Positions 36,963 to 61,399 of a DNA stretch of 64,000 nt are shown piece by piece. This DNA comes from Selaginella moellendorffii (lineage: Eukaryota; Plantae; Lycopodiophyta). The DNA lies in assembly GCF_000143415.4 (NCBI RefSeq), contig NW_003314266.1:2885964-2949963 (forward strand). The letters run 5' to 3'. The first letter of the stretch is position 1. Each line of letters opens with the position of its first letter. Made by a program: the position numbers and the translations under genes. The notes under the pieces were generated by a model. The model worked only from the letters and a program-made list of their open reading frames with translations, did no database searches and was not told where the DNA came from.

Positions 36963-39847
36963 GCCGGATCCAGCCACCTTTGGTGAAAAGATCATACCTT
37001 TCCGGTTCTAATCCCAGTGCTGTGCAAATGAGTGCTCGAAGAATCGACTTGTGAGTTGATAGAGAAGCTGTGTGAATTGGAAGGGATGGACAGGGCCGCT
37101 AGAGAACGGGAGACGAACACGAAGAGTTTCGTGTATGCTCACCGCCCGAGTAACTTGGAGGAGCATCACCATGAACACTCATTCATTGTACTCAAAAAGA
37201 CCGCATCACAAACGAAAGGACTTAACCTTTATTTAAAGGTTTATTGACTAAGACAAAATGGATTAAGTAATTTATTAATTAAAAACAAATGAAATTTAAT
37301 TAATTAACACTTCCCATTGCTCATTTGTTGCTGCCATGTGCGCCATTATTAATGCACCACAATCGGCCAGACTTGCATGTTCTTATTTCTTGGCTAGGCC
37401 GGGAAGAAGAACAACTTAGAAATTATATTGTTAATAATGTAAATGAGAAGAAATTTTTAAACAAATTTCAAACCATTACTGAAATATTTGCTTGACATTT
37501 CTAAATTTGGGGAGGTGGATCTTTGCCAAATCAGCTACAAACTTTCGAGTAGCTATTATTCTCGCTCTCTCAAACCCCATAGCCCTACAAAAACATTTAA
37601 ACTTGTATATAATTATTTATATTTAAATTTAATATTTGCCATCCTATTATTATAATTAAAATGATAATTAAAATAATTAATGATAAATTATCTTTTTTAT
37701 TTTATTTTTTCAATTTAAAAGGTTTAAGTAATTTATAGTTAAATAAAACTTGAAAAATAGTTAATACATAAATATTTATTTTAATGTTTTATTAGGAAGA
37801 GAATTTTTATATTTTTTATGAAAAATTTGAAAAAGCAATAAAATACTTAGTCTTTTAGTTCTTTAATATTTATTTTAATTTATTATTATATGAATTTTTT
37901 ATTTTGCTATATATTTAATAATTAAAAATATTATATTAATACTAGTATTGGTACCTACAGCAATGAATTAAATTGCCACCAAATCTTTGAGTTACAATGT
38001 TATTTTTAGCTGAATCATTTTGCCTTTTATTGTGATAAGTTGGTAAATTTTTATTTTTATTTTATTATATATATATTTAAAAGTGCCCTTGATTTCAAAT
38101 TCAAGCATAGGACTTTAAATAATAAAGTGATAATTTAAATAATAATAAATTATTAAATTAATTAATTTATAAAAATTAAAATTTCTTTAAAGTTATACTT
38201 ATACAAAATATGGAAAAATAAGATACTTTTATTTTATTTTAGCAGTTAAATTATTTTTATTTCAAAGTCCATAAGTTATTTTTAAAACACATTGATATAA
38301 GTTATTAAAATCTCATAAAAACACTCATAATAATAAATAACTTTTATGATGATTTGTATAAATAGCTTCTAAATTCATTCAATCCTAAAAATTATGTATT
38401 TATTGCATATATTTTTAGTCTTTTATAGTTTAAATTTGATATCCTTGTCTAGCATTATATATAAGAGATTGAACTCACTCTAATTATCCTTCACATCCTC
38501 TTTATCCCCTATTCGAAGGATAAATTGTTTTGAAGATTTGGACTTATTACACTTGTCTTCATTTTGCCATTTATATTCAACCTCATTTCATTATTGCATT
38601 TGTTCGGATTTATTATGTCGAGGCCAGATATTCCATTTAAACTCACTATGCTCATCCTCATTCCATAATCCATATTGTTTGTCCTTACTCCACTACTATA
38701 TTATTCGTCCTCTCTTCATCGTCAAGGCCGGAGTCATCTATCCCCTCTCCCCCTCCTCCAAAGAAAAAAAGTTCGAAATATTAAAGCAAAAATGAGAAAA
38801 TAAGAAAAATTGAAGAAAAACAATTATGGAAGAAGAAAAATTGGATAAAGAAGCATTGAAAGAAAAATTTGTAACAACTAGAAATAGGAAAATCAACAAA
38901 AAGATATATGTTTAAAGCTTGGAAAATAAGGGATTTTCTATTATAAAATACTTCGGCCACCACAATATAAACACTACTCAACTTCCTTAATACACAACTC
39001 AATAATAGAGATGGGAAAATTAATAACAACGTCCGCACTCTCAAGGGAATACATAAACTTCTTCAACTTTTAAAACATAGGAATACTCAACATTAGAATT
39101 AATCATAAACTTTATCAATAAAACAAAAGTAAGATTCTCAACTTCATACACATACTTAACATCTAGATTAATATGAGGAGGACATAAAACACTCAATTTA
39201 ACACTGGACTAAAAATGAGAATCATAAATGATTGATGTGTTATGAAAAAGAAACACTTCAGATGAGGAAAAAATATTAAAAACATAATAAGGTGGCTCAA
39301 GCCAAGAAGGTCATATTGTTTTCCCATACTCAATCCTTGAACATTTTCAAAAAACCAAACTACATCATCCATAACTTGTCAATTGATATCAGAATCATAT
39401 TCCACATTAACAGGAGATGGCAAAACACCGAGAAAAAGATAAATTGTGTAATCACGTCTCATAAAAGTTGGAAACAGCAACATACTAAGGATGGGTGCAA
39501 CACTAATATGATCACACCTCATAGCATCAAAAGTTTGATTCAACAAAGTAATATTAGCTTTTGATCAATGATAGCATGGCATGGTAGAAGAAGAAAATGT
39601 AATAAAGATTAAAAAAAAGAGAGTAGATATAAGTATAATGATAATTAGAATTCCAAATCTTGCAAAAAGCTAATACAAATTTAGATCTAAGAGCAAAGCA
39701 TTACTTTAGGGACAAATTGCAATATCCTTCATTTCCATTAATGTGGGAATAAGTATATTAATTAGGGTTTAAACCCTTGAATAAATGGACCATATTTAAT
39801 CCCAAATATGCTATAGTACTATAATTAATGTATTACCTAGCAAGTGT

Positions 39848-40456
<609 letters not shown>

Positions 40457-40896: not shown

Positions 40897-42657
40897 TCAT
40901 CTGGAGCATAGCAAAACATATGGTGCTGACGTCTTCGGTGCGAGTTCGAGCGCGTGTTTCGATGCCCAGGAAGCACCATCGCAGTCATTCACGGATCTGG
41001 CAGCTCCAAGCAAGCAAACCCAGTCGTGAAAATCCGGCTCAAACGGCATACATGCCATCAAGATCTTGGCATCGTCGAGATATCCCGCTCTACACAGAAG
41101 ATCAAGCATGCAACCATAGTGCTGTTTGGATGGCGCCAAATTATAGTCCCGGATCATCGATGCAAAGTAGCTCCTGCCAATGCGGGCATTGCCGGCGTGG
41201 TTGCAGCACAGTAGAACGCAAGTGAAGGAGGAATCCATAGCCGAGAATCCTTCCACCTCCATGCTTGCGAGGATCCCGATGGTTTCCACTAGCTTCTTGC
41301 TTGCAGCGGCCAAGAGCGCAGTCCAGAGGATAGAATCACGCTCCAGAAGTCCATCAAAGAGAGATTTAGCCCTTTGGAAGCTCCCCTTCCGTGCGTAGCC
41401 GAGGATCAAGATCGTCCACGATCGTAAGTCCCGCTCCGGCATCTCTGAGAGGATGAAGCTCGCTCGCTCGATGCAGCCGCTCTGGACGAGTTCGGCCAGC
41501 ATGACGTTCCACGAGACTTTGTTTCGATCGGGCATGCACGAGAAGAGAGTCTCGCATTCTTCGATATGCCCGTGTTGCGCATACGCGGCCAGCACTGTGT
41601 TCCACGAAACCACGTCCCACTTGAGCATTCCATCGAAAAACTGGAGCGCTTCGTCAACCTTTCCCGCTTGAGCGTAGCAGTGAAGCATGGCATTTCTAGA
41701 TACCAGGTCCTGGCACGGCATCTCCTGAAAAAAAACCTTTACCCGCGAGAGGGATTCATTCTGAGCGATCAATGCAAGCATCAAAGTCCACGAGACCAAA
41801 TTCCTCTCTGGCATTTCCTCGTAGAAAATTCTTTTTACCCTTTCAAACCTCGCAAAGGTGGCGTCGGCGTTGTTATACGCAACCAACATTGCATTATAAG
41901 ACATCACGTCCCTGAACGGCAAAGCTTTCCACAAGTTCTCCACTTCCAATATATGCCCTCTTAGGGCATATGCCGTAAGCATGGCATTCCACGTCACTAT
42001 ATTCCGCTGAGGCGACTCCTCGAAAACACTTCTCGCGCCATCTACACTCCCGTACCGTCCGGACGCCGAAAGCATCGCGTTGAAAGATGCCATGTCACGC
42101 TCGGGCATATTCTCAAACACCTGTTTCGCCTTTGGGAAATGCCCGTGTTGGGCATATCCTACAAGCATCGTGGTCCACGATATAAGATTCCTCTCAGGCA
42201 TTTCTTCAAATAAAACTCTCGCGTTTTGTATAAATCCACTCTGCGAGTACACGGCAAGCATCGAGTTCCACGACACTAAGCTCCACTCCGGCATATTCTC
42301 AAACATTTCTATAGCATCTTCCAGATACCCGTTAAGGGCATATGCCGAAAGCACCGTGTTCCATGTCACAGCATCTCTGCCGGTGGTCATTTGATCAAAC
42401 AATTCTTTCGCAGAGCCGATATGCCCGCTTTGGGCATACGCAGCGATCATCAAGTTCCAGGAGAAAACGTTCTTCACGGCGAGACCATCAAAAACCCGCC
42501 GAGCTTCTTCCAAACTCCCACACCTCCCATACATTTGCACAAGCAAATTCGAGAGGTACTGCGCTTGGTGGTGGTGACTCGCGATCTTTGAGTGGACGTC
42601 TCTCACCTGGGACAAGCTCTTGCAAGATCTGATAAGCCCAACAAAGTCTTCCACCAT
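40897..42657 (-). CDS. PLS-class PPR protein (S-motif rich, partial E domain)
   Basis: 586-aa intronless ORF with LVQMYGRCGSL, repeated MPERNLxSWxxML, HYGCMLDLLCRAG and APYVLL. Confidence 0.92.
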   Translation of the reverse strand: MVEDFVGLIRSCKSLSQVRDVHSKIASHHHQAQYLSNLLVQMYGRCGSLEEARRVFDGLAVKNVFSWNLMIAAYAQSGHIGSAKELFDQMTTGRDAVTWNTVLSAYALNGYLEDAIEMFENMPEWSLVSWNSMLAVYSQSGFIQNARVLFEEMPERNLISWTTMLVGYAQHGHFPKAKQVFENMPERDMASFNAMLSASGRYGSVDGARSVFEESPQRNIVTWNAMLTAYALRGHILEVENLWKALPFRDVMSYNAMLVAYNNADATFARFERVKRIFYEEMPERNLVSWTLMLALIAQNESLSRVKVFFQEMPCQDLVSRNAMLHCYAQAGKVDEALQFFDGMLKWDVVSWNTVLAAYAQHGHIEECETLFSCMPDRNKVSWNVMLAELVQSGCIERASFILSEMPERDLRSWTILILGYARKGSFQRAKSLFDGLLERDSILWTALLAAASKKLVETIGILASMEVEGFSAMDSSFTCVLLCCNHAGNARIGRSYFASMIRDYNLAPSKQHYGCMLDLLCRAGYLDDAKILMACMPFEPDFHDWVCLLGAARSVNDCDGASWASKHALELAPKTSAPYVLLCSR

Positions 42658-44339: not shown

Positions 44340-46194
44340 AATGCGGGGATTTAGGGTTCTTGGGGCGAGTTACGTCCAGCGCAGGGGGATTTCCAAGTGG
44401 TTCCGTGCGCAGTGGTGCGATGTCCGCCTGGCCTGCGGTGGCCTCCCTCCCACACAAGTCCCAGTGGCCGCCATTCGCAATCCCGAGATCATCCGCAACT
44501 CTCCTCGCCGGGATGCGCTTCACGAGCGGCGGCTTCGCGGCCATGACGATGAGTGCCGCGCCGAGTACCTCGCCGCCAAGCGGATCTCCGGGGTGGGATT
44601 CCAGCACCACGGCTTCGATTGCAGCATCGACGACGTGCGCTGGATCGGCGATGGCCAGCAATCCGTGTCGCTCATCTGGGATCTCCACAACAAGCCCGAG
44701 GGGATGGATCCCTACACCGCTGCGAAGAGGGTGGTCGAGATCGCCGGTGTGTTTGGGAGCGTGGTGGAGAGGACAGCGTACGCGAGCCGCCGGATGCTGT
44801 GCTTCCTCCCGCTCTTCACGCGCGAGTATAACAAGGTGAGAGACTTCGAGGTGGTGGACGGAGAGGTGGTGGAGAGGAATCTCTCGTGCCCGCTTTGCGG
44901 CGATGGTGAAGCTCGAGCGCCGCACTGGGCGAATCTGGTGAAGCACTTCCGGCTCAAGCACGAGAGGGCCAGGACCAAGATGATCTATCGGATGCATCTG
45001 GCGTCCGGGGAGGAGAAGAAGTCGTGGAGGAAGATCTTGCTTCACCAGGAGACCAAATATCAGCGCGCTGCTAGAGCTGTGTTGACGCCTCGGGTGCTCT
45101 TGCCGGATGGATTGCCGCTGGCGCTCATCAAGGCCGGGTACTTTGTGAAGCAGATGCCTGATAAGCCCGCCAAGGCACCGGACATGGCTGTTTGGTCTCA
45201 CATCCTACAGGTACTGTTATTCTTGAAATGTTTCTCTTCATCGTTTCTTCTTCTTTTCTGCCAGTTCCATTCTGCCAGTTCCACATCAAAAAATTCTTTT
45301 TTTCTTGGTTTCGTTTGCTCCAACTTCTTTTCTTCCATCTTTGTTCCTCTCAAAGCTTAGGTCCAGTAACTCTGAATTTGTTTTTTTTCTTGTTTTTTAT
45401 TACATAGAGCTTTGATGGCTTCAACTTTTTCCTTCTTTGCGCTTTGATCCAATCAACTTCTTTTCTTCCACCTCCAAATCTTTGTTCCTCTCAGAGCTTT
45501 GATCCAGTAACTTATCTTTTTACTTGTCTTTGCGTGGAGCTTTGATGACTTCAACTTTTTCCTTCTTTGAGCTTTGGTCCAATCAACTCTTTCTCATTCT
45601 ATACTGTCTCTCTTCTTTGCTTGCATAACTTTTCATTTCATTCATTCATTCATTCATATACTGTTTACAAGGTCTCGCAGCGTCCCCCCAAGAAGCATGA
45701 GACTCTTTGCATATTTCTTTCCTCTTCTTTGCTTTGAGCTTCTCGCTTAGCACACAATGTTGTACTTCTCATTCGTCTTTCTCTTCTCTAACCATCTTGG
45801 AACTTTTTATCAGGTAGCCAACCTCGGGATCAGCTGCATCTGCCTCGTCTGCGACAACGTAAACTACACCGGCGCAATGGAGTTCGCGCGGCGGCAGAAC
45901 GTCCACACGGTCCTCATCGGCATCGGCGCGAGGCAGAAGATAAAAGAGAAAGCCAACCTCTACTTCTCGTGGGAGGAGGTGGTGACGGGCAAAGCCCTGG
46001 CCATGGCCGAGCAAGCCGCCGCGAGCTGGGCCACCAAGCAGACCGAACCAGGCAAGTCCAAGTCAAAGAAGAAAAAAAAGGAGCCTTTCGCAGTCCAGGA
46101 GGACGACATGTTCTTCGAGTACTACGAGAACTTGTACCCCTCCTCCTCCGGCTCGTCGGAGTTCGAGTGGAGCGATTCGGACGAGTCGGACTGA
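44340..46194 (+). CDS. Plant NYN-domain protein with inserted C2H2 zinc finger (two exons)
   Basis: SLIWDLHNKP, TAYASRR, CPLCG...LVKHFRLKHER, KYQRAARAVLTP, AGYFVKQMPDKP, then exon 2 ICLVCDNVNYTGAMEFARRQNVHTVLIG. Intron 45211-45813. Confidence 0.8.
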
Positions 46195-46241
46195 TCCGTG
46201 CTTCAAAATCTTCTCAGGGATCTTTGTTTCCTTCATTTGGA

Positions 46242-46382
46242 AAGTTTGCGAGGAACTTAGCAGGCTTTGATCTGCTTGTCGTGCTTCTCGCGACGTAAAT
46301 GGAAATCTTTGCTTCTTTCATTTGGAAGTAACAACGATCATTGTAAGTTTGCGAGGAACTTAGCAGGCTTTGATCTGCTTGT
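46242..46382. repeat. 38-bp perfect direct repeat duplicating the end of the isocyanide synthase ORF
   Basis: aagtttgcgaggaacttagcaggctttgatctgcttgt at 46242-46279 and 46345-46382. Confidence 0.9.
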
Positions 46383-47947
46383 AGTGGCTGGGTCGACCAT
46401 CTGGGAATCTCACAAGCTCTATCGTGTAGCCATCGCGCTTGAGCAGCAGCTGCTCGTTCGATCCCAGCTCCTCGCAAGCCAGCTTCCCCGATAGCTCCCC
46501 AGATCGAATGACTTTGGAGTGGAGCAGCATGAACTTCCCATCCGCGAGCTCCACCACCGCGTTGTGCCACGGCGTGGGGATGTGGAAGTTCTTCTCCTCG
46601 GACGAGCGCTGCGCGGCGAGCAGCGAGGTATGGATCACATTGATCCCATACTTGGGGCCGCGATTGGGATGCGGGTGGATCGAGACGCGCAGCGCGAGAG
46701 GGAAGAGCCACTCCACCATGGCCGAGTAGGCGCGGTTGCGCAAGAGCATGAGGAAGCCCACCTTGCTGCAAAGCTCCTCCTTTGCGGCGAGCGAGGGGAG
46801 ACCCTTGCAGCTCTTGTGTTCTTGGAGATCCTCGAGCATGAATCTGGAGAAGCCATGGTGTAAGTTGCGCGTCTCCACGCTCTCTTGGATGTCCTTGCGC
46901 ACGGAGGATTCGTCGTTGCCAAACAAGCACAGTAGCGCTCGTCTCGCGGTCTCTGCGCTGGAAGTGAGCTTCGTCTCGATCGGGTGCTCCAAGACCGTGT
47001 TGGAGATCAGCGCTGCGATGCTATCCTCGTCTTGGTTGTCCAGGAGGAAATCATCCAGGCGAAAGAAGTTGATCAATCCGGGATGTAGATCATGCGCCAT
47101 CTCGCGAAACATCCTTCCGTAGCTATCCACAGTAGCATCATCGGCTCCAACTGGAAGAAATCGCGTAAGACGATGGATCGAAGCAATCCAGCTCCAGGAA
47201 CTTACCCAGATCCGAGAAGACGTGGCCATCCGAGACGATGTTGTAGTGCACGCCCGGAGGATAGACCTCCTTGACGAGATCCGCGATGATCTTCATGGAG
47301 CGAATGGCGAGCTCCTCGGCCTTGTCCGGGAACTTCCCCAGCGTCTTGTCTGGATTGCACGACTTCACTGGAAACGCCGGCAGGATGAACTCGAGAGGAA
47401 CGTTTCTCGCGACGTGGTATCTCACTCTCTCGCCGAATCTCTGCTTGCCTCCGCTGGTAAACCACTGATCGTTGCTGGCAAAGTGGATGAAGTTCTTCTC
47501 GATGATCTCCAGCGCGCGAGCGGTGATCTCGTCCACCTCTTGATCGGCAGTGGAGGTGTCCAGGAGGCAAGATCTCGTCATGGCGCTGTTGTCCAGCAAG
47601 AGAGGGGCGAGGTAGTCGATCTCGCGCTCCAGCGTACCTGGATCGACGAACACCACGCCCTCGAAGCCATTGCCGAGGAATCTCTCGTAGATCGTGGCTG
47701 CCCAGGTGCTGGATTGGTCAGCTCCGAGCAGAGTGATGGTGTACTTGTTGATCGCTGGAGCGATGGTGCGCGAGGCTTGCTTGGCTGCCTCGAGATCTTG
47801 TGCCTTGCTCGCAACCACGGACTGGAAGGTGAAATCGCCCTTCTGGGCGACTGGGACACGGCGCGACGCGGACTGGGAGATGAAGGCGATCTCGCCGCTC
47901 TCCCTGTGAATGTACAAGAAAGCGATCTTGTCCTTGGGATAAGCCAT
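46360..47947 (-). CDS. DIT1: Isocyanide synthase, DIT1/PvcA family (PF05141), ~510 aa, two exons
   Basis: Exon 1 is 47947-47206, the 55-nt GT-AG intron is 47205-47151, and exon 2 is 47150-46360 (1533 nt, in frame). Family motifs: EFILPAFPVKSCNPDKTLGKFPDKAEELA, VYPPG..IVSDGHVFSDL|VGADD..VDSY, HGFSRFMLEDL, MLLRNRAYS, LRVSIHPHPNRGPKYGI, HIPTPWHNAVV. Confidence 0.93.
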
Positions 47948-48049
47948 GGCGTTCTAGCTAGATGGGAAGAATTGCTATAAAGTTTCTAGGAATTGCGATC
48001 ACTTACGTGTTTGTTCTCCTCTGTTAGGTCGAGGTCTCTTTGAAGTTCC

Positions 48050-48057
48050 TTTATATA
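48050..48057 (-). promoter_or_regulatory. Putative TATA box of the isocyanide synthase gene
   Basis: TATATAAA on the minus strand about 100 bp upstream of the ATG. Confidence 0.5.
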
Positions 48058-48337
48058 ATGGAGAGGTGTCTTGGTACATTTTAGACCCGCAATTTAGAAA
48101 CGTGAGAGGGTTGGGCCGCCTGTCCTGGCCGCCATGTGGAATTATATTGACCAAGCCAGTCAGAGTATTCCTAGAATGTTTTAAGCAAATAAAAATAAGC
48201 CTAATATACTAGGAATTGTTTAGTATAACTATTAACTCTATATCTGTTTAATATAATTAATTGATTCTTATTATCAAGATTTATTGGTACATTATCAACT
48301 GGTGGAATATCCTTGGCAGCGGGCCTAGGGTTTTGCA

Positions 48338-50195
48338 ATGCCTGACTCCGTAGGTCGCTTCCAACGCTTCCATGATTCCATGTTTGTGTCCTTTGAAGGT
48401 GGAACACATCGCGCTCTCGATCCAGTTAAGGACACTCTCGTCGGATCCTTCTTCCAAATCAAGCTCGGCGGAAGTATCAGGGACGTGCCCGAGAGTTTGC
48501 TCATGTACGTCCGGCAGGACTTGGTAGACTTGTACGATGCCCTGCTGACTGACATTGCCGACGGTGAAGACACCCGGAGGGTGTACATCGGCCACCCAGG
48601 AACCGGAAAATCCCTGACGGCCATCCAGCTCTTGTTCCTCTTGCTCAAGCAGCACAGCGCTAACCCAGTGGTGTACTACTCGCATACGGTGTCCCAGGGA
48701 GTTTACCACCTTTTCAAGGGGGGACAGTTCCACTCGCTTCTTAAGTTCGACGCGGTGGCGCGGTACTTAGAGGATCCAGACACGTTCTATATACATGATG
48801 GCAGTGAGGTTTCGGATTCAGGCGGCGTCGAGGCCCGAACCGTGCTAGTAACAAGTCCCAAGGCTAGTGTTTACAAGGAGTTCGCCAAGGCTTCTGGGGG
48901 CTACGACGCTTTTTATGGTCGCTTATGGACTGAAGAGGAGCTGAAAGCATGTCGGGAGCGTTCGTATTCCCGGATACCATGGCAGACAGTCGCGCGGCAT
49001 GTATATATGGCCGGCCCCATTCCCAGGCTCGTCTTCCAGACTGCGGAGAAGTTCAAAACCGTGGTGCGGACCCTGAAGAGCAAGCTAGCTCAGACATCAG
49101 ATCTGCTTTCGGTTTTTTCTTCGATACGCGACCACGACCTGGAGCAATCTTTCTCCCATGACGTAGTGCTTCACTTGGACAGGGGAAACGATTCGTCGGA
49201 AGGTTACACAAAGATTGCTTCGGACTATGTGAAAGAACAGTTGTTGCTACGCCTGGATAAAGAAAAGTGGCTGGAGATGATTGACAAATACACCAATTTG
49301 CAAGGTGTAGGTGGCCTTACTTGTTTCCGGGCCACCGTCCTAGAGCTGCTTATGCACATTACCTTCCCAAGGTTCCTGGGAAAGTGCGAGCGGATCTGCA
49401 GCAAAACGCATCGACATTCAACTGCTGCTCCTGCCAGGATGAATGTGGATGAAGCCGAGGACTTCAAGGTTGTCTTTTATGTGAACTATGAAGACCTGCA
49501 AGCCAAGATCGAAAAGTGCATCGGGGATAAGTGTGCAGCGGCTTACTTCTGGCCGCGTACTAGGTCTGAGGCGGCCATAGATAGCATCTACATCGACTGC
49601 AAACGGAAACAGGCGTATCTTCTCCAAGCCACTGTCTCTAAGAAGCATGTGGTCGTATGGCATCCTGTGAAGTTACTTATGGAGTTTCTGAGCAGCAAGG
49701 CGATCCGGATTGCAGGTCTTTACTTTGTGGTGTCGGACGCGATCTTTTCAGGATTCCGGACTCAAAGGTGGAGGAAAACTCGTGAAGTGAAAGGCGAGTA
49801 TCCTGAGGTGATCAACATCCCCAGCCTTTGTCAGTACAAGCTGGAGTTCTCGGTACTTGAGGACGACTGGAAGAACATCGAAACGCTGAGCGATACCTTG
49901 CGAAACATGGATGACAATTTCAAATTGACACTGGTAAGGTTTGAACTTTATTTTTTTTGCGATTGTCTTGACGGTCGTTGCTAGAGCCTGGAGAAGGATT
50001 TGCCAGAAGAGCATGTCCAGCGCAGGCGTTCTGCTGACAATTCCTCGTCCTCGTCTGTCACGTAAGCCAAGTGACGATTCTTGTTTGATACTCATTGAGG
50101 TGTTTCACAGGATCGAGCCAGAGTGCGAGCTTGACATCACAGAGATAGATGTGGCCGCAGGCGAGCTTTATGAGCAGGACTATGATGAGGAGTAA
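48338..50195 (+). CDS. Crinkler/RHS-type protein: P-loop NTPase plus C-terminal REase-fold domain
   Basis: Walker A YIGHPGTGKS, Walker B-like FYIHDG, TVLVTSP, LWTEEEL, AGPIPRLVF, IASDYV, and REase-like YFWP..SEAAIDSIYID...LLQATVSKKH. A long first exon to 49933 is followed by two small exons (49985-50061, 50111-50195). Confidence 0.8.
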
Positions 50196-50708
50196 CGTAA
50201 ACCTTAAACCCTCAAACTTTTTAAACTTTGCAACCAAATGTTCAAATATTTCATAATGGAATCTAATTAGGGCGTCTTTGAAGACGCTGTGATGAAGAAA
50301 GAGTGGATTCTTCCCGATGAAGACCCAGGAGCATGGTACAATGGTTAAAAATTACATCACATAAGTTTAACGTAATTTTAACTTTATCACCCTTGTGCAT
50401 GCAATTGGGCAGCTGTGAAACATGGTTTGAGAAAGTTTCATGATCCAAAATTTTCCCCAGCCGTAGCAATCCAAAGCTTCTGGAGGAGTTTATTATGACG
50501 TAATGGCTTCACGAACGGCTTTGAGATATCTTCAGTTGCTTTAATGCTAGAAAACACTACTTTGGCCTGCCAGCAGTTCCAGGACGGTCTATACCTCCCA
50601 TCGCTCCATCAGCGCATCGCATGATCCAGGTGGTGATATAAAAAACTGGATAAGAGAAACCCCGTAGCTGTAGCTTTGCATTCGTCCAATCTTCTTATCC
50701 GTTCAGAT

Positions 50709-52090
50709 ATGGTTTTCGTCGAGAGATCCACACTCGTCCGCCCAGCGTCAACAGTCCTCAATGGATTCGGTTTCGGCAACAACACCAAAACGCTGCTGTG
50801 CATCTTCAGCCACATGTACCAGGAGTTTCCATACCGGAACCGCCTCCTCTTCTTCAGGCCGCCTTCGCAACCGTTTTCGAAGATCATCACCCACATGAAA
50901 CAGTCTTTGGCGGCGGCGCTGTCCGAGTTCTACCCTGTCGCTGGCAGGATCTCCGTCCGCAAGGACATGCGAATGCAGCTCGAATGCAACAATCACGGCG
51001 TCATGTTCAGCGAGGCGTCGTGCGATCGCCCACTTCCCGAAGGCGACAAGTTTGATCTGGACCCCGAGTTCCTGCTGGAGCTGTCTCAAGCTCCTGGGCA
51101 CGAGAAGGATCTCAAGTGGCCGTGGCCGGAAGATGCTCCACTCCTTTTCATCCAGGTACACAAGATCTGACAAACTGTATTGAAAGACAATGTTATACTT
51201 TCAAGGTGACCGAGTTTTCGTGCGGAGGCGTCTGCGTGGCGATGAAGTACAGCCACGAGCTCATGGATGGTACAAGTTTCTGGCACTTTATTCAATCCTG
51301 GGCGGAGATCTCTTGTGGAAAACCAATCTCCCAGCCTCCTTATGTGGTTCTATTCCCGATTGGAATCCCACCTAGCGATGCTCCTCCTCCACCAGTTCCC
51401 AGCGGAGGAATGCTCACTCTACTCGATCGAAATGCGCCGGATCCGGGGCTTTTCGGCTACAAGTCCTTCCCGAGAACTCGGAGGTTCCGATTCGGGAAGC
51501 TGAAGATCCAGGCTCTCAATCAGAGAAACCCCGAGTACTCCACATTCCAGCTCCTATCATCGCACATCTGGTGGAAAGTTTGCTTAGCTCGCGGCTTGGG
51601 CGACAAAGACACCACCAAGCTGTTCTTCGCGGTGAATTGCCGAGGGCGATTCCCGCACCTCCCGAAAGAGTATCTCGGCACTCCCGCTGCATGGGCGATG
51701 GCGTCGGCGAAGTGTGGCGAGATGGAATCGCTGGGAATGATCTCCTCGCTCATCAAGAAGACGATCAGGGAGTTTAGCGAGGAGAGCTGGGGCGTGTCGG
51801 CGGGGTTTCTCGAGCACTACGCGGGTGGAGAGTCGAGCGACAAGGCGGTGCTTGATATGAGGCCGGACAGGGACTTGTACATTGGGAGCTCGTTCTATTT
51901 CCCGGTCTTCCACGAGTTCTCGTGGGGGACCCCGTGCGAGATGGCCATGGCGCAAGCTCCAGCGAATGGGCGAATGTATTACTTCCCGGGCAAAGAGAAA
52001 GGCAGCGTGGATCTCTACATCACGCTGCAACACCAGGCAATGGACAAGCTCGAGAACGACGCATCTTTCTGCGACATGCAGGCGAGCTAA
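50709..52090 (+). CDS. BAHD acyltransferase (PF02458), ~443 aa
   Basis: LSEFYPVAGRI, LECNNHGVMFSEA, PLLFIQ|VTEFSCGG with the typical Q-intron (51156-51205), catalytic HELMD (HxxxD), and the DFGWG variant EFSWG. TATA-like motif at ~50636. Confidence 0.92.
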
Positions 52091-52941: not shown

Positions 52942-54744
52942 TTGGATTCATGGCGGCATCGCTTCTTTCTTCGGACGATGGTACATTGCTGTTTCCACAA
53001 ACGATCCAACACGACTGCCTTGTATCCCAACACTGGAATCATCCCCACCCGCCAGAGCCAAGGCAGGCAGCTCTTCGACAAGCAGCGCTCCTCGCTTGCC
53101 CCGCGCCAGCGCCATCTCGATCGATTCCTGCTCTCCCCACTCGAGGAGCAGCAGCAAAGCCTCCAAATCCATGAGCGCCTCGCCCACATTTCTCCCAATG
53201 GAGATATCTCGGCCTACATCTCGCTCCTGCAGGACTGCCGCTCGCTCGAGCAGGGCAGGGCAATCCACCGGCACATCGCCCACAGCAAGGTGGCGGGCGA
53301 GCCGTACGTGCACAATCTCCTGCTCAAAATGTACGGCAGGTGCCGCCGTCCCGGCGAGGCGCGACTCGTTTTTGATTCCATGCCCCTCAAGAACAGCTTC
53401 TCCTGGAATCTGATGCTCACCGCATATTCCCAGGCAGGGCATCTGGAGGAGGCGAGGACGCTCTTTGATTCCCTGCCTCACCCAGACACAGTGGCCTCGA
53501 ATATCATGCTGGCCATGTACGGTAAGTACGGCAGGACGAACGAGGCTGCGGAGCTGTTTTCTGAAATGCCCGTACGAGATGCCGTTGCATGGAACACTCT
53601 GATGACAGCATATGCCCAATCCGGGCATTTTGAAGAGGCACTTTCTCTGTACAGGAGCTCTTGCCTTGAAGGCTTGCGGCACGACCACATTGCGTTCATA
53701 AGCGTATTGGAGGCCTGTTCGCGGCTAAAAGCTCTTGAGGAGGGCAGGAGAATCCACCATGCTGCTGCAGCAATCGGCTGTGGTGCAAATCTCAAGGTCG
53801 TGACAGCAATCGTGAATTTCTACTCCAGGTGTGATCAACTTGATGAGGCCAGGAAAGCCTTTGATGGTGCCCCGGAGAAGGATGCCTTCTTGTGGACGGC
53901 CATGGTTACAGCATATGCCCAGGCAGGGCATCTGCAGGATTCTGAGGATCTCTTTGCTCAGATGCCTGACAAAGATGCCGTGTCGTGGACGGCGATGATG
54001 GCAGCATATTCCCGGAACGGGCATCCCACTCAAGCTCTACGAGTGTTCCGCCAGATGGATCTGGAAGGAATCCACCCAACCGGTATCACTTTCATCACGG
54101 CTTTGGATGCCTGCGCGATGATCCCATCGCTAGCGCTCGGCCGGATCATTGCCGCCACCATCTACTTTGTAGAGCCCAGGTTGGAGCCCGCGATCCAGAG
54201 CTGCTTGCTCCAGCTCTACGGCAGATGCGGCGCTCTGGGCGATGCCAAGGCCGTGTTTGATTCCATGCGCGACCGCAACGTCGTGACTTGGAGCTCGATC
54301 ATTGCCGCGAATGCCCAGAATGGACAGGGCCATCGTGCACTGGAGCTTTTCTACTCGATGCTCCTCGACGGTGTTCTTCCCGTGGAGATCACGCTGATCA
54401 GCGTTCTTCACGCCTGCTGCCACTCGGGACTCTCCGGGAACGCTCCGCAGTTTTTCCAGTCCATTGCCTCGGATTTCGAGCTGCAGCCCATTGCGGACCA
54501 CTTCGTTTGCGTGATCGACGTGTTTGGGCGATCCGGGGAGATCGAAAATGCCGCGGACTTGATCGCGAGCATGCCGTTTGAGCCCAATGCGGTGGCGTGG
54601 ACAATTCTTTTGAATGCTTGCAGGATGCACAAGGATGTGGAGAGGGCCAAGAGAATCACCGACAGGATCGTGAGGCTCGATGGGTCGTGGCAGTATGCTC
54701 TCCTCACGGGCATTCACGCCGATAACGAAAAGGTGGTAAATTAA
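52942..54744 (+). CDS. PLS-class PPR protein (partial E domain)
   Basis: 600-aa intronless ORF with LLKMYGRC, DAVSWTAMMAAYSRNG, HFVCVIDVFGRSG and PNAVAWTILLNACRMH. The true start may be a downstream ATG. Confidence 0.9.
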   Translation: MDSWRHRFFLRTMVHCCFHKRSNTTALYPNTGIIPTRQSQGRQLFDKQRSSLAPRQRHLDRFLLSPLEEQQQSLQIHERLAHISPNGDISAYISLLQDCRSLEQGRAIHRHIAHSKVAGEPYVHNLLLKMYGRCRRPGEARLVFDSMPLKNSFSWNLMLTAYSQAGHLEEARTLFDSLPHPDTVASNIMLAMYGKYGRTNEAAELFSEMPVRDAVAWNTLMTAYAQSGHFEEALSLYRSSCLEGLRHDHIAFISVLEACSRLKALEEGRRIHHAAAAIGCGANLKVVTAIVNFYSRCDQLDEARKAFDGAPEKDAFLWTAMVTAYAQAGHLQDSEDLFAQMPDKDAVSWTAMMAAYSRNGHPTQALRVFRQMDLEGIHPTGITFITALDACAMIPSLALGRIIAATIYFVEPRLEPAIQSCLLQLYGRCGALGDAKAVFDSMRDRNVVTWSSIIAANAQNGQGHRALELFYSMLLDGVLPVEITLISVLHACCHSGLSGNAPQFFQSIASDFELQPIADHFVCVIDVFGRSGEIENAADLIASMPFEPNAVAWTILLNACRMHKDVERAKRITDRIVRLDGSWQYALLTGIHADNEKVVN

Positions 54745-55824: not shown

Positions 55825-57655
55825 AGCCTCATCGTCTTCTCACACCATAGCCAAGCCCTAATACCAAGCAGTATATTCGCACATCATTTAGCTATTCTAA
55901 TAGTATTTCAACTAGCAAAGATCCCAGCTCCGCTGGGAGATATAGCATACCCAAGAAAAATAAATTTTCTTTTCTAATTTTACGCATTCAAAAAGCATTA
56001 AAACATTTTGAAAATTTTAATAATTTGCTATAAGATTGTCTATAGCAAAACAATTCAAATAATATACAGCTAAAAATCTAGAAAATTAAAATTTCAAAAT
56101 ACATATCTATTAAATTATTCAAGACTACTTACTATTCAGTAATTATATAAAAGGGAACATTATTATTGATTAATTTAGATTATTAAAATATAAACGTTTC
56201 AAATATAAAAATGGATCTAAGACATAACTATATATATATTAAGATTTTTTTTATATGATATATTATTTAACATTTTAAAACATACTATAAATATGTAAAT
56301 TTTTTATTTAAGTTTTTAATTTAGTATTAAAATTGCTGTATTAAGATTATCATTTGTCAGTAAAGTGTTACTAATGCATTATAATTCTCAATAGTTCTTC
56401 ATTTTCTTGTATCAAAACTTATATTATTGATACTTAAATTTTAATCAAAATAATAAAATTATTAAAATATTTAAATGAAAACTATAATAACAATTGACAT
56501 TTGTTAAAATTATAATAAAACATATCATTGACAACACATATATAAACAATTGTTAAAAAACATTATAGATAATATTTACAGCTATAACTTATATGAATTT
56601 TAGGAACAACATTTTAGTTAACTCTAAACATGAAACCTAATTATGATTCTGAAAAATGATTCATTAATAATGATTTCTTTTATAAATTTAGCATTGTGTA
56701 TTTTAAGCACTAAAATGGGTTTTTTTAGCACTAATTATTTCTCTAAAAAACTAAAATAATTTATTTTATAAATTAAATGCTAATTTATATTTCAAAACAA
56801 TAGCACTCTTATACTTTCTTTCTTTACTCAAATACTCCATTATATATTTTTTATTAAAAAAATGTAAGATCTAACGATTAATTATTATTTTAACATTCAA
56901 AATTACTATTTGCTATAGTATCATATATACCCTATATTTATCATCTGGAAAAACCCATTTAGCAATTTCATTTTATTAGCACTATCTACATCCCTTGGAG
57001 CTACAAAATGCAAAATCTAAGTAATACAAAATATTCAGAAGTCCCAAATCCACACCTTTCAAATTATCATTTGATTTATGTTTTTATGCACATATTTTAT
57101 AAGTGTTATTGATTTTGAAACTGCATTGGGCATATTTAAGAAAATCATATAAATTTTTTATAGAACTTGACTTAATCTATAATAATAATATTAAAAATAG
57201 ATTATAATACTATAGAATGAAATATGTGAATAATCATGGCAAAAAGTTTAAAGAGATTTTCTCCATAGTGGGTTTATTATTCTTCAGATTTGTTGAGAAG
57301 CTAATTGAGTTTTTTCACGGATGGAATTCTTGTTAATTAATATGACTGTTGATTACAATTAGTTATACAACACTACCAGTAATTAAATCCAGAAAGAAAT
57401 GTTAAGAACAAATATATGAAATAACATTATTATATTCATAGTAAGATCTAAACTTTTTAGCAGAAAATTGTATTAAAGATGAGATCTTTAAACCCATTGC
57501 TATCTATCAAAATGAATGTCCAAAGTTTATCACAGTAACTCACAAAAAAGTAGTGAAGTTAATGTATACAAAGAAATTGAGATTGTAGAGCTGAAGTTTG
57601 TTAATTCTTCAAGTGTCATTACAATTAGTTAGTGAATCTGAATAATAAATTACTG

Positions 57656-57944
57656 ATGCTTTATTTCGTTAAAGTGGGACTTTTCATTATCCCACTTATG
57701 GTGTGTGGCCACATGCCATTTTTATAACAACAATAAAAAATTAAAGTTTTAGCTATATAATTTATAAATTAAAAACTTTTCATATGATTTTATGTTATAA
57801 TATTGTGAAATATAAAAAAATAAATTAAAAAACAGATAGAAATATTAATAAATATTAATTAAGTACTAGGAAATGGCATGTGGACACATGCTAATTAATA
57901 TCCCACTTTTGCTGAATAAGTCCCACTTTAACGAAATAAAGCAT
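57656..57944. mobile_element. MITE-like element (289 bp) with 27-bp perfect TIRs and apparent 4-bp TSD ACTG
   Basis: atgctttatttcgttaaagtgggactt (57656-57682) has its exact reverse complement at 57918-57944. ACTG flanks both ends, and there is a second internal inverted repeat (ccacatgccattt / aaatggcatgtgg). Confidence 0.8.
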
Positions 57945-58399
57945 ACTGGCACTAAATAATATAATGAAATTTTAATAAACAATTATATACTCATCATGAT
58001 TAGATGTCATTGCTTTCAGTTTTACCTAGCTATTTAGTTTTCTTTTTCCTTTATTTCCTCATCTTTCAAATGCCAAAAGTCTTAGAGAAAACCTTATTAT
58101 GATAAATAACTCTTCAAAAGAGTAATTGCAAAAGGTATATTTTTTAACTTTTTAAATTAATGCATATAAAAGAAAATAAATTTGCAATATAAATCCATGA
58201 ATCCCTGTCAGGATTAAAGATTTTCATTAAAGAAAATAAGAGTTAATGAATTCTTTATGGTCACATCAACCAGTGCATTACACTAATAGTACAACATCTC
58301 ATACCATAATTTTCACATTAAATATAAATGTATAAATGTATAAAAATATTTAATGTGTATAAATAAGTGTATGAAAAACATAAAAATGCTCATAAAAGT

Positions 58400-58814
58400 T
58401 CTCATATAACTGTTTTCAAGCATGAAAAACTTTCAAACAATGAGGTCATATAAGTCTAAAATAATATGAAAACTGAACATCAATTATAAACATAATTACA
58501 TTTTTAAATTATTAACTTATTATTTAAAAACATAGATGTATATAATAGTATTAACATATTTTCTTTATGATAATATATTTATAGTAATATAATATCATTA
58601 CAGATATATTATATACATAAGGTTAATTTCTTTTGTATTTGCATTTCTAAAAAATAAACTTTTTTTTTATCAAACTTATCATTTTTAATTAAAGGGTTAT
58701 TATTTTCATTTTATTGACTCTACTTGATGATTCTCTTGTATTATCAATAAGATTGTTCAGCTCTAGATTTGAAAGAACATAAAACTAAAATTTATAAAAT
58801 TAGATCTAACATAC

Positions 58815-58877
<63 letters not shown>

Positions 58878-59420
58878 TAATTAAAATATATTCTATATTT
58901 CAAGAACCACTAAATTTTAAATTTTATTATTAATTGTAAGGAGAAAATTAAATTATTTTTCAAAGTTCTCTATATAGCTGTTTTTAAGCATGGAAAACTT
59001 TCAGAAAATGAGATCATGTGGAACATTGATTGTAAACATAATTAAATTATAATATTATTAAGTTATTAATTAAAAACATAGATTAGCAAATGACCATGTA
59101 CGTAATAATATTAATATACCTTATATATGATATTGTGTTTATGAAAATATTTTAATATTGTGAATATAAAAATATACATAATGTTAATTGTTTTGTATTT
59201 TCATTTCCAGAAAATATAATTTTTTGTATCAATCTTATCATTTATGAGTAAAGTGATTTTTTCACATCTTATCAACTCTACTTCATGATTGTCTTGTATT
59301 AGAAATTATATTTTTAAAACCTAGATATTAAAGAACATAAAACTAAAAATTATAAATTTAATCTAATATACTACGATATCCATGAATAGTTAAAAAGAAA
59401 TTCTATATTGCAAGAACTAC
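58400..59420. repeat. Diverged tandem duplication of a ~500-570 bp AT-rich unit, with (TA)n in copy 1
   Basis: ctgttttcaagcatgaaaaactttca (~58410) matches ctgtttttaagcatggaaaactttca (~58978), and aagaacataaaactaaaa occurs at ~58773 and ~59331. Confidence 0.75.
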
Positions 59421-59674
59421 TGCTTTCTTCTAGCTGTAAGAAATTTTTCACTTTATTAATACTATAGAATACTATTATCTAGATAAAATATAAAATCTAT
59501 TTCCAAGGTAAATTATAAAAGAAAAACATAATTTCAGCTGGGATTTATATTATATATAACATGGATGTTGTGGATAATGCTAATCTTGAAGACTAAAAAT
59601 TATTTTAAAATTATTCTGACTTATAAAGATATTTATATTTGAGATATCCTCGAGAATGTTTTTTTTCATTATTT

Positions 59675-59720
<46 letters not shown>

Positions 59721-61399
59721 ATTGATCTTTTTATTATTATTATTATATTATAAAATAGAAACCTGTATTGTCATAAAAGTGTGAAAATGTCATCATGCAT
59801 GACAAAATTCCATTTTGCTTTGTTACTGCTCTATTCCCAATTTCCAAAGCATATCATTAATATTACTGTAATAGTAATATAACTATTCAGTAGCTACATT
59901 ATCAATAATTAAAAAGCTGTATTATTTTAATTTATTAAGATTATTGTGAAAGTTTTTAAATTTTTTAATATCATCATTTAAATTTATCATGGGAGGACCC
60001 TAGCATAAATTCTAACTTTTTATTTTTTTAAGCTATCTACCATTTGTATGACATGTGGTTTGTCCTTTTTCTCTTTGGAACTGCAGAAGGTAGCTTGAGT
60101 TTTTCTTTCATCTCTGAGAAGAAGCTAACAAAGCTTTTGCTTGTAGTAACCCGAGCATAGATGGTGAAAACTGGTGGCAAGGCCATGCATATGCTACTCA
60201 ATTCCCAGCCAAGGCACTCTTAAAAGGATTGATTCACCAGGTTTAATATTTGTACCATCACAAGACTCCCTGCAAGCTGACTTGGTCACTCGGAGAAATT
60301 GAGAGACAGTCTACTTCATGATTGAGTTGAAGGAACTCAAGTTGGTTGTTTGGTTGTAGTTGCTGTTTGTGGGATTGAAACACCAGAGGATCTTCTCATA
60401 GATGGTCTGGGACATGAATGCATCCTTGCCAACACTGATTTTTAGGGGTTGTTCATGTAAGTAGTACTCATTTCCTACAAGTTTGGTACTCTACGCAGGT
60501 TGGGTCATTTGTTTGACACAGCGAGGCGTGAAATCTCATCGTTAACTCCTCACTATGGCCATGTCGATGTGGTGGCAGCAGCCAGAGAGCTTGCCTTCAA
60601 GCTAGACAGCCCGAGCTTCAGGTTTTGAAAGAAAAAAAACGCTTGCTCTTTGCTTTGGTTTTTTTTACTTCCATACTTGGTCCCAGTGGGAGTGTGAAAG
60701 CTTTTCTCTCAGATTTACCAGACACTTGCTGGGCGGGAATGATGGTACATATGCATGAGTTTTTCGTATATTGTTTTTCAATCTCTTTCTCTTTCTTGAG
60801 CAACTATGACAGTGCTTTCCAGAACTTACACACTCATGGCACTTCTTCTTTTAAGAAAAGAAACTCTACTATATCATTCACCACTATAGTGTTCAGAAAA
60901 TACTAATAATGTCACTAATAATCATGATTTTGAGAAGTAAGACCATTGTTATTACTCTCGTTACCACAGGCTGATGGTTCATTCAGATGAGATTGTCAGT
61001 AAATTTTCATGAGTTTATATGCCTAAGCAGACGTATTTGCTTATGGCAAGGTCAGTAAGGAATCTCTCGTGTTCTTTCATGGTCTAAATGTTTCTTTCTT
61101 TATATCCCCAAGGAACCTTGAGCAGAAGGTGTTCTGGATTATTTGATTCCTCATAGAGTAAGTTCCTGAAGGTTCTTTTTGCTGCACTCTACAGTTACCT
61201 TGTTCTTGCAGACTTTCACAGGAAACCGTCCATCCCTAAGTGTGCTGTATTATAGATCCAGATTACAAATGATCAAATCCAGATTTTGATTTGATATCAA
61301 GTGATGTTATCAAATTATCATCTATGTGCTGTTATCTTCAAAGATGTAGGCAATAACAGCATCAATGCAGGGAAGAATGCTGTATCCAGTGTCCGGTTC

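What the first reader, a model, noticed from the sequence alone, without database searches (positions are those of the whole stretch)
46360..47947. Intact isocyanide synthase (DIT1/PvcA family) embedded in a land-plant genome
Seen: a two-exon, ~510-aa gene with the full ICS motif set (PAFPxKS, PDxAEELA, SDGHVFSD, RNxAYS, RxSIH, KxGI, PTPWH), a host-sized 55-nt intron whose removal restores SDGHVFSDLVG, a TATA box, and plant genes on both sides, which argues against contamination. Known: ICS enzymes (PvcA, IsnA, XanB, CrmA, yeast Dit1) convert an amino-acid amine to an isocyanide using ribulose-5-phosphate, giving metal-chelating antimicrobials or the N-formyl-tyrosine precursor of the yeast spore wall. 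To my knowledge no such pathway is characterised in plants. Inference: the ~140-aa N-terminal extension, the DQW..GG...F..RV segment and the lack of a fused TauD domain resemble the fungal Dit1/CrmA type, suggesting horizontal acquisition. It could supply isocyanide defence or copper-binding chemistry, or a dityrosine-like spore-wall component.
Basis: partly seen in the sequence, partly recalled or inferred. Interest (0 to 1): 0.93.

Follow-up and report, generated by a model that had tools for sequence, protein, structure and literature searches.

The report
Fungal-type isocyanide synthase gene in Selaginella
The spikemoss Selaginella moellendorffii carries an intact, spliced and transcribed gene for a Dit1-type isocyanide synthase that it most likely took from a chytrid-like fungus; the gene is already in public databases, but what it makes in the plant is unknown.

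Summary
On the minus strand, 47947..46360 is a two-exon gene with a 55-nt GT-AG intron at 47205..47151. It encodes 510 aa, identical to the NCBI record [quoted passage not shown]. Both exons hit PF05141 far above cut-off. The model (pLDDT 90) matches the solved synthases PvcA and PIsnA at Z 33. Contigs from four studies skip exactly the intron, so the gene is transcribed and spliced.

PPR genes and a plant-type BAHD gene flank it on a 4.1-Mb scaffold, so it is not contamination. It is one of at least seven intact paralogs, with dN/dS of 0.14-0.20.

In maximum-likelihood trees the plant copies are monophyletic and sit inside a chytrid clade (99/97), itself inside fungal Dit1 (100/99).

New here:
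- The intron sits at the same codon and phase as in three chytrid genera and one ascomycete, so the gene arrived as fungal genomic DNA.
- The derived paralogs lost the intron, and this copy branches earliest.
- The N-terminal extension is predicted to be a PAS-like domain.

Known already: the annotation, and a 2018 paper (PMC5974471) that lists the Selaginella proteins. This scan also reported paralogs on other pieces of this genome. No Dit2-like P450 lies next to any copy, and the product is untested.

The parts
48050..48057 (-). TATA-like element (TATATAAA)
   Evidence: Sequence read. It lies 110 nt upstream of the ATG and 42-49 nt upstream of the furthest 5' contig end (48008). Its function is inferred, not shown.
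47948..48008 (-). 5' untranslated region (approximate)
   Evidence: Spliced contigs of four runs end at 47985-48008. In X1 the end at 48008 is followed by Illumina adapter sequence.
47206..47947 (-). Exon 1 coding part (codons 1-247 plus 1 nt)
   Evidence: Pfam PF05141 profile positions 1-73 match residues 175-247.
47151..47205 (-). 55-nt phase-1 GT-AG intron, at the same position as in fungal homologs
   Evidence: Contigs of X1, X2, X3 and X5 (four studies) skip exactly 47151-47205. Geranomyces, Phlyctochytrium, Zopfochytrium, Durotheca and Selaginella paralog P0003 have an intron at the same codon and phase.
46360..47150 (-). Exon 2 coding part, including the stop codon
   Evidence: Pfam PF05141 profile positions 76-267.
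47573..47947 (-). Predicted PAS-like N-terminal domain (residues about 1-125)
   Evidence: AlphaFold2 model, pLDDT 90. VIA-align gives Z 11-11.8 and rmsd 2.0-2.9 A over 94-120 residues to LOV2 and ARNT/HIF2a PAS-B domains. No Pfam hit on this part. Sequence homology to the N-termini of Geranomyces and protist homologs.
46372..47551 (-). Isocyanide synthase catalytic domain (residues about 133-507; the span includes the intron)
   Evidence: Z 33, rmsd 2.3-2.5 A over 302-310 residues to PvcA (3e59) and PIsnA (9dh4, 9dhm). phmmer E 1e-28 to 9dhm.
46202..46359 (-). 3' untranslated region, overlapping the end of the convergent neighbour and holding a direct repeat of about 103 nt that varies between samples
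   Evidence: The X1 contig skips 46242-46344. X5 replaces 46203-46345 by 17 other letters. Contigs run on into 46000-46241.

Best explanation
This is a functional nuclear gene of Selaginella moellendorffii for a single-domain, Dit1-type isocyanide synthase with a PAS-like N-terminal domain.

Shown here: the gene is intact, spliced, transcribed, under purifying selection and set among native plant genes. It belongs to a plant-specific paralog clade that nests within chytrid sequences inside the fungal Dit1 clade. It keeps an intron at the exact fungal position.

Inferred: one old transfer of genomic DNA from a chytrid-like fungus into the Selaginella lineage, followed by duplications. The derived paralog clade lost the intron once, and this copy is the earliest-branching survivor.

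Inferred from family chemistry (PvcA, IsnA, Dit1): the enzyme condenses the alpha-amino group of an aromatic amino acid, most likely tyrosine, with a carbon from ribulose-5-phosphate. That gives an alpha-isocyano acid, which may be hydrated to the N-formyl amino acid as proposed for yeast Dit1. Other plant enzymes encoded elsewhere would then elaborate it.
For: Gene model and identity:
- The spliced CDS equals P0001, named DIT1 by NCBI, on a 4.1-Mb scaffold.
- Contigs of four studies skip exactly the intron.
- Neighbours are PPR genes and a BAHD whose nearest relatives are plant BAHDs.

Family membership:
- PF05141 on both exons.
- Fold match of Z 33 to PvcA and PIsnA.
- The conserved PAFPxKS, PD..E, SDGH, R-SIH, K-GI and TPWH residues also align with PIsnA, which was crystallised with Tyr and with an isonitrile product.

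Selection:
- dN/dS 0.14-0.20 at dS 0.3-1.1 among six paralogs.

Origin:
- Careful ML tree: Selaginella clade 100/100, chytrid plus Selaginella 99/97, fungal Dit1 clade 100/99. The 132-row quick tree agrees.
- The AU test disfavours keeping the fungi together without Selaginella (dlnL 18.2, p 0.039).
- The phase-1 intron after SDGHVFSDL is shared with three chytrids and Durotheca.
- The N-terminus and the C-terminal YPDGRPSHY motif are shared with chytrids.
- Searches of 5.8 and 1.84 billion proteins found no other plant. The best non-Selaginella hits are at most 47% identical, and the named ones at the top are chytrids.
Against: - No enzyme activity or product is known for any plant member.
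- No Dit2-like P450 or TauD-type oxygenase lies within 10 kb of any of the seven loci inspected, so the pathway context is missing.
- Even yeast Dit1 has not been shown to release a free isocyanide (PMC5974471, PMC10153163).
- The AU p-value is only just under 0.05, and the clade was named after the tree had been seen.
- The branching order inside the chytrid plus Selaginella clade is unresolved.
- Absence from other plants rests on databases that may lack other lycophyte proteomes.
- The runs laid are recorded only as 'RNA?'. Their RNA nature is deduced from the exact removal of the intron.
Confidence: 0.85

Rival explanations
1. The gene is of fungal origin and is expressed, but in the plant it no longer makes an isocyanide. 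It might stop at the N-formyl amino acid, use another amine substrate, or have a regulatory or binding role through its PAS-like domain.
For: - Yeast Dit1's free isocyanide product has never been shown (PMC5974471). One study questioned whether dit encodes a true ICS (cited in PMC10153163).
- No Dit2-like P450 lies beside any plant copy.
- The stem branch of the plant clade is long, 0.57 changes per site.
Against: - Every invariant and nearly invariant residue of 62 eukaryotic homologs is kept.
- The core motifs align with PIsnA, which was solved with an isonitrile product.
- Purifying selection acts across all paralogs.
Confidence: 0.3
2. The gene was inherited vertically from an ancient eukaryotic ancestor. 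On this view a Dit1-type gene was present early in eukaryotes and was lost in nearly all plants except the Selaginella lineage.
For: Dit1-type proteins with the same N-terminal extension also occur in protists, for example the diplonemid Namystynia and MMETSP transcripts. The family is therefore wider than fungi.
Against: - The plant clade nests inside fungi next to chytrids, not beside the protist clade. The AU test gives p 0.039 against placing it outside fungi.
- No other plant was found in two very large protein searches.
- This reading needs many independent losses.
Confidence: 0.05
3. The gene is assembly contamination: a fungal contig or chimeric join in the Selaginella assembly.
For: The nearest relatives are fungal, and chytrids live on plants.
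Against: - The gene lies at about 2.93 Mb of a 4.1-Mb scaffold, between PPR genes and a plant-type BAHD.
- At least seven intact paralogs lie on six scaffolds.
- Identity to any fungus is only 34-47%.
- Spliced transcripts appear in runs of four studies.
- GC3 of 0.78 is within the range of neighbouring genes, 0.57-0.82.
Confidence: 0.01
4. The transfer went the other way, from a Selaginella-like plant into chytrids.
For: The branching order inside the 15-row clade is unresolved.
Against: - The clade's outgroups are Ustilaginomycotina and Ascomycota Dit1 (100/99).
- The intron is also present in an ascomycete.
- Several chytrid orders carry the gene, in fungal-type clusters with a P450, MFS or OPT transporter.
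Confidence: 0.02

Closest known systems
Yeast and fungal Dit1 (spore wall maturation protein, dit1/dit2 cluster)
   Same: - Single PF05141 domain with an N-terminal extension of about 130-170 aa and no TauD fusion.
- Similar length (510 aa here; fungal homologs about 450-610 aa).
- The plant clade sits inside the fungal Dit1 clade.
- NCBI names the protein DIT1.
   Different: - No Dit2-type P450 (CYP56) or Dtr1-like MFS gene lies next to any plant copy.
- The family is expanded to many copies.
- Identity to ascomycete Dit1 is only about 30-37%.
- The host is a vascular plant, whose spores have a sporopollenin wall (my own knowledge).
Chytrid Dit1-like genes (Geranomyces, Phlyctochytrium, Zopfochytrium, Cladochytrium)
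   Same: - Nearest relatives at 34-47% identity and the sister group in trees.
- Colinear over the full length, including the N-terminus and the YPDGRPSHY tail.
- Identical phase-1 intron position.
   Different: - Chytrid genes have one to three further introns.
- They sit in clusters with OPT plus AMP-binding genes, or with P450 plus MFS genes. In Cladochytrium the gene is fused to an MFS transporter.
Bacterial isonitrile synthases PvcA (3e59) and PIsnA/IsnA (9dh4, 9dhm)
   Same: - Same catalytic fold: Z 33, rmsd 2.3-2.5 A over about 305 residues.
- Same core motifs.
   Different: - The bacterial enzymes are about 310-330 aa and have no PAS-like N-terminal domain.
- They are paired or fused with a TauD-type Fe/2OG oxygenase (PvcB, IsnB).
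- Identity is about 24-29%.
Fungal XanB (ICS-dioxygenase) and CrmA (ICS-NRPS-like)
   Same: They share the PF05141 domain.
   Different: XanB carries PF02668. CrmA carries PF00501 and PF02458 domains (PMC5974471). The plant protein carries neither. A separate plant-type PF02458 gene lies 2.7 kb away, but it is not fused and not of fungal origin.

Membership tests
Isocyanide synthase family (Pfam PF05141 DIT1_PvcA) | Match to the family HMM above the curated cut-off | tested here: met
   97.7 bits (exon 1) and 147.7 bits (exon 2) against a cut-off of 26.4. Profile positions 1-73 and 76-267 of 273.
Isocyanide synthase family (Pfam PF05141 DIT1_PvcA) | PvcA/IsnA three-dimensional fold | tested here: met
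   Model pLDDT 90, pTM 0.90. Foldseek E 7e-22 and TMt 0.83-0.88. VIA-align Z 33 over 302-310 residues.
Isocyanide synthase family (Pfam PF05141 DIT1_PvcA) | Conserved core residues (PAFPxKS, PD..E, SDGH, R..SIH.H, K.GI, TPWH) | tested here: met
   All are present, invariant or nearly so in 62 homologs, and aligned with the same residues of PIsnA. Which of them are catalytic could not be checked, because no paper on the PIsnA structure was found.
Isocyanide synthase family (Pfam PF05141 DIT1_PvcA) | Converts an amino-acid amine plus ribulose-5-phosphate into an isonitrile | not testable with these tools
   Needs a recombinant enzyme assay.
Fungal Dit1 subfamily | Phylogenetic placement inside the Dit1 clade | tested here: met
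   46-row fungal clade at 100/99 that holds the plant clade. The 132-row tree agrees.
Fungal Dit1 subfamily | Single-domain architecture with a homologous N-terminal extension and no TauD or NRPS parts | tested here: met
   PF05141 only. The alignment with Geranomyces covers residues 3-505 and the N-terminal residues align.
Fungal Dit1 subfamily | Divergently transcribed or nearby Dit2-type cytochrome P450 partner | tested here: not met
   No PF00067 gene lies within 10 kb of the seven Selaginella loci inspected. A partner elsewhere in the genome was not searched for.
Horizontally acquired gene (fungus to plant) | Recipient sequences nest within the donor group with support | tested here: met
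   Chytrid plus Selaginella at 99/97. AU p 0.039 against fungi without Selaginella. The AU result is marginal and the test was defined after the tree was seen.
Horizontally acquired gene (fungus to plant) | Physical integration in the host genome, and expression | tested here: met
   Plant flanks. Spliced contigs in four studies.
Horizontally acquired gene (fungus to plant) | Absence from the recipient's relatives | tested here: inconclusive
   Hits that carry a name include no plant other than S. moellendorffii. In one search, all hits above 50% identity that carry a name are S. moellendorffii (P0123 and P0143 are unnamed). Genomes of other lycophytes could not be searched with these tools.

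The most novel reading that the evidence does not exclude
Selaginella runs a real plant isonitrile or N-formyl-amino-acid pathway. A family of PAS-ICS enzymes captured from a chytrid-like fungus would supply isocyano- or N-formyl-tyrosine units, and native plant enzymes (for example P450s, 2OG oxygenases or the nearby BAHD acyltransferases) would turn these into metal-binding, antimicrobial or spore-wall compounds. This would be the first isocyanide-synthase-based chemistry in a land plant.
Probability: 0.45. Interest if true: 0.8.

Novelty: new member of a known kind. Interest (0 to 1): 0.55.

Why it matters
Isocyanide synthases are backbone enzymes of microbial natural products: copper- and iron-binding compounds, antimicrobials and the yeast spore-wall dityrosine. 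I found no paper describing such chemistry in a land plant.

A spikemoss that keeps many expressed copies of a fungal-type synthase under selection is a clear, testable case of a fungus-to-plant transfer seeding plant specialised metabolism.

The shared intron gives unusually direct evidence that the transfer was of eukaryotic genomic DNA. The predicted PAS-like domain points to a regulatory or ligand-binding part of Dit1-type enzymes. I did not look for, and so do not know of, any earlier description of it.

The caveat is that the gene's existence is already recorded, in the NCBI annotation, in Lim et al. 2018 and in earlier reports of this scan. The open question is function, not discovery.

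Tried and rejected
- Paper searches for Selaginella with DIT1, PF05141, isocyanide, isonitrile or dityrosine found nothing relevant.
- A 2025 paper on horizontally acquired metallophore genes in plants concerns nicotianamine synthase, not ICS.
- A 2025 domain-evolution paper does not mention PF05141 in its main text; its supplements were not searched.
- Searches for a paper on the PIsnA or PvcA active site found none, so catalytic residues could only be judged by conservation.
- Conserved ICS-neighbour pair: the 548-aa ORF that lies head to head with the gene has no counterpart at the paralog loci.
- Co-transferred cluster: the BAHD neighbour is plant-type, and the BAHDs at two ICS loci are only 25-31% identical. 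So this is neither a duplicated block nor a fungal cluster.
- A whole-gene intron finder failed on Violaceomyces and Durotheca, probably because the gene ranges include untranslated ends. Reading the local sequence solved it.
- The sample that holds P0031, the closest unnamed homolog outside the chytrid clade, could not be identified.

Full report
**1. What is in the sequence**

The minus strand between 47947 and 46360 holds two open stretches. They join through a 55-nt intron at 47205..47151, which begins GTAAGT and ends TTCCAG.

The joined CDS is 1533 nt. Its 510-aa product is identical, residue for residue, to database protein P0001. NCBI calls P0001 [quoted passage not shown], and it lies on the 4.1-Mb scaffold GL377570.1. 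So the window is from the spikemoss S. moellendorffii.

Pfam PF05141 (DIT1_PvcA) matches exon 1 at 97.7 bits (profile 1-73) and exon 2 at 147.7 bits (profile 76-267), against a cut-off of 26.4. The profile therefore continues across the splice. No other Pfam domain is found.

**2. The gene is used**

I laid contigs of four public runs from four studies on 46000-48300. Each run has a contig that skips exactly 47151-47205 and is otherwise 99-100% identical.

DNA would keep the intron, so these contigs come from spliced RNA, even though the runs are recorded only as "RNA?". The contigs stop at 47985-48008, and in one run the end at 48008 is followed by adapter sequence. A TATATAAA lies 42-49 nt further upstream.

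At the 3' end the contigs run into the convergent neighbour. They also show that a direct repeat of about 103 nt (46242-46344) varies between samples.

**3. It sits in plant DNA**

- PPR genes lie at 40897-42657 (-) and 52942-54744 (+), and a BAHD acyltransferase at 50676-52090 (+).
- The nearest relatives of the BAHD are Selaginella and angiosperm BAHDs.
- GC3 of the gene is 0.78, within the range of its neighbours, 0.57-0.82.

Contamination is therefore excluded for practical purposes.

**4. It belongs to a family in this plant**

Searches returned at least 13 distinct S. moellendorffii PF05141 protein records. Some are fragments and some are probably the two haplotypes. I inspected seven intact genes on six scaffolds:

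- one head-to-head pair (L006);
- two identical copies 14 kb apart (L004 and L005);
- single genes elsewhere.

Pairwise dN/dS among six paralogs is 0.14-0.20 at dS 0.3-1.1. The duplications are therefore old and selection is purifying.

**5. Fold and active-site conservation**

An AlphaFold2 model built on 62 homologs has mean pLDDT 90 and pTM 0.90.

Residues 133-507 superpose on PvcA (3e59) and on PIsnA (9dh4 with L-tyrosine, 9dhm with an isonitrile product). The match is Z 33, rmsd 2.3-2.5 A, over 302-310 residues, which is nearly the whole of those chains.

The residues that are invariant or nearly so in 62 eukaryotic homologs are all present. The core motifs also align with PIsnA. I found no paper that assigns catalytic roles, so this is conservation, not a mechanistic test.

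**6. The N-terminal extension**

Residues 1 to about 125 have no Pfam match, but they are modelled with confidence. They superpose on PAS domains (LOV2, ARNT and HIF-2alpha PAS-B, BMAL1 PAS-B) at Z 11-11.8, rmsd 2.0-2.9 A, over 94-120 residues, covering whole PAS domains.

The same region is homologous in sequence to the N-termini of the Geranomyces protein (alignment 3-505) and of several protist homologs. JGI labels one of the protist proteins a PAS-domain protein.

The extension is thus an old, probably PAS-like part of eukaryotic Dit1-type enzymes. Its role is unknown.

**7. Origin**

An exhaustive HMMER search of 1.84 billion representative proteins gave 1323 relatives. None outside Selaginella exceeds 47% identity. 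The best named hits are chytrids: Phlyctochytrium, Cladochytrium, Geranomyces and Zopfochytrium. Sordariales, Xylariales and Ustilaginomycotina follow.

Among hits that carry a name, no other plant appears. Many hits are unnamed, and genomes of other lycophytes could not be searched.

A careful maximum-likelihood tree (71 rows, LG+C20+F+G4) gives these supports (ultrafast bootstrap / SH-aLRT):

| Clade | Support |
|---|---|
| Selaginella paralogs alone | 100/100 |
| Selaginella plus all chytrid rows | 99/97 |
| That clade plus Ustilaginomycotina and Ascomycota Dit1 | 100/99 |

A protist clade (the diplonemid Namystynia and metagenomic rows) and more distant sequences lie outside. A 132-row quick tree agrees.

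Holding all fungi together without Selaginella costs 18.2 log-likelihood units (AU p 0.039). This is a marginal rejection, and I defined the test after seeing the tree.

**8. The intron is the most telling detail**

The window gene's only intron interrupts the codon that follows SDGHVFSDL, after its first base (phase 1).

| Gene | Intron at this codon and phase |
|---|---|
| Window gene (P0001) | 55 nt |
| Selaginella paralog P0003 | 57 nt |
| Geranomyces variabilis | 77 nt |
| Phlyctochytrium | 60 nt |
| Zopfochytrium | 115 nt |
| Durotheca (ascomycete) | 57 nt |
| Violaceomyces (basidiomycete) | none |

A chance coincidence with one of two to four fungal intron sites in about 1500 nt is of the order of 0.3% (my estimate).

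It came with the gene, which points to transfer of fungal genomic DNA rather than of a bacterial gene or a cDNA.

In the tree the window copy branches first and P0003 second, and both keep the intron. The four derived paralogs (P0002, P0004, P0005, P0006) have none. This fits a single loss.

**9. What it probably does**

By homology the enzyme should join the amino group of an aromatic amino acid to a carbon from ribulose-5-phosphate. That gives an isocyano acid, possibly released or hydrated as the N-formyl acid, as proposed for yeast Dit1 (PMC5974471, PMC10153163).

This step is inferred, not shown. Several things count against a simple "plant dit pathway":

- No cytochrome P450 of any kind lies within 10 kb of any plant copy. 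One chytrid, by contrast, has a P450 plus an MFS gene next to the gene.
- BAHD genes lie near the ICS at two loci. They are only 25-31% identical to each other and are of plant type. Any functional link is speculative.

**10. What was already known**

- NCBI annotates the gene as DIT1.
- Lim et al. 2018 included the S. moellendorffii PF05141 proteins in their Table S1. They mention "one species of moss" and "outlier representation in ... plants".
- This scan had already reported paralogs on other pieces of the same genome and reached the same reading: Dit1 type, chytrid-like donor, already annotated.

New here are the confirmation for this particular copy, its position as the earliest-branching paralog, the intron shared with fungi, the single intron loss, and the PAS-like prediction.

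**11. Verdict**

The gene is a member of a known enzyme family in an unusual host. Its existence is on record; its chemistry in the plant is open and easy to test.

Noticed in passing
window 50676-52090 (+); L003 6346-8027: A BAHD acyltransferase gene (PF02458) lies within 3-4 kb of the ICS gene, both in the window and at the locus of paralog P0002. The two BAHDs are only 25-31% identical. The window's BAHD is plant-type, with nearest relatives Selaginella HCT-like and angiosperm BAHDs. Chance adjacency at two of seven loci seems unlikely, but no functional link is shown.
   Followed up: partly
window 48338-49984 (+): An intact 548-aa ORF (annotated as 573 aa) lies head to head with the ICS gene, about 390 nt from its ATG. 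It has no Pfam family, only a sub-threshold P-loop match to retrotransposon hot spot protein. It has no counterpart at the paralog loci.
   Followed up: partly
window 46202-46346: A direct repeat of about 103 nt in the shared 3' region of the ICS gene and its convergent neighbour (ORF 45757-46194) is absent from the contig of run X1. In run X5 it is replaced by 17 other letters. This is likely allelic or haplotype variation.
   Followed up: no
window 38001-40000 and 56001-60000: Very AT-rich blocks (GC 0.20-0.26) interrupt sequence that is otherwise 45-56% GC. I did not examine them.
   Followed up: no
L008, L009, L010 (chytrid loci): The chytrid Dit1 genes sit in different small clusters. Geranomyces and Phlyctochytrium have an OPT transporter plus an AMP-binding enzyme beside the gene. 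Zopfochytrium has a P450 upstream and an MFS transporter downstream, like the yeast dit cluster. The two Cladochytrium proteins (P0029, P0030) are ICS-MFS fusions.
   Followed up: partly
P0103, P0093, P0109, P0119, P0131 (no loci): Dit1-type proteins with the same N-terminal extension occur in protists (the diplonemid Namystynia karyoxenos, an MMETSP transcript) and in unnamed metagenomic rows. They form a clade outside the fungal one.
   Followed up: partly
L002 15331-16510 and 19821-20999: Two plant-type 2OG-Fe(II) oxygenase genes (DIOX_N plus 2OG-FeII_Oxy) lie 4-9 kb downstream of paralog P0003. Bacterial ICSs work with Fe/2OG oxygenases of a different family (TauD). This may be coincidence.
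   Followed up: no
L006 7324-9143 (-) and 10001-11497 (+); L004 and L005: Paralog arrangement: a head-to-head pair of ICS genes on GL377587, and two copies encoding identical proteins 14 kb apart on GL377593.
   Followed up: partly
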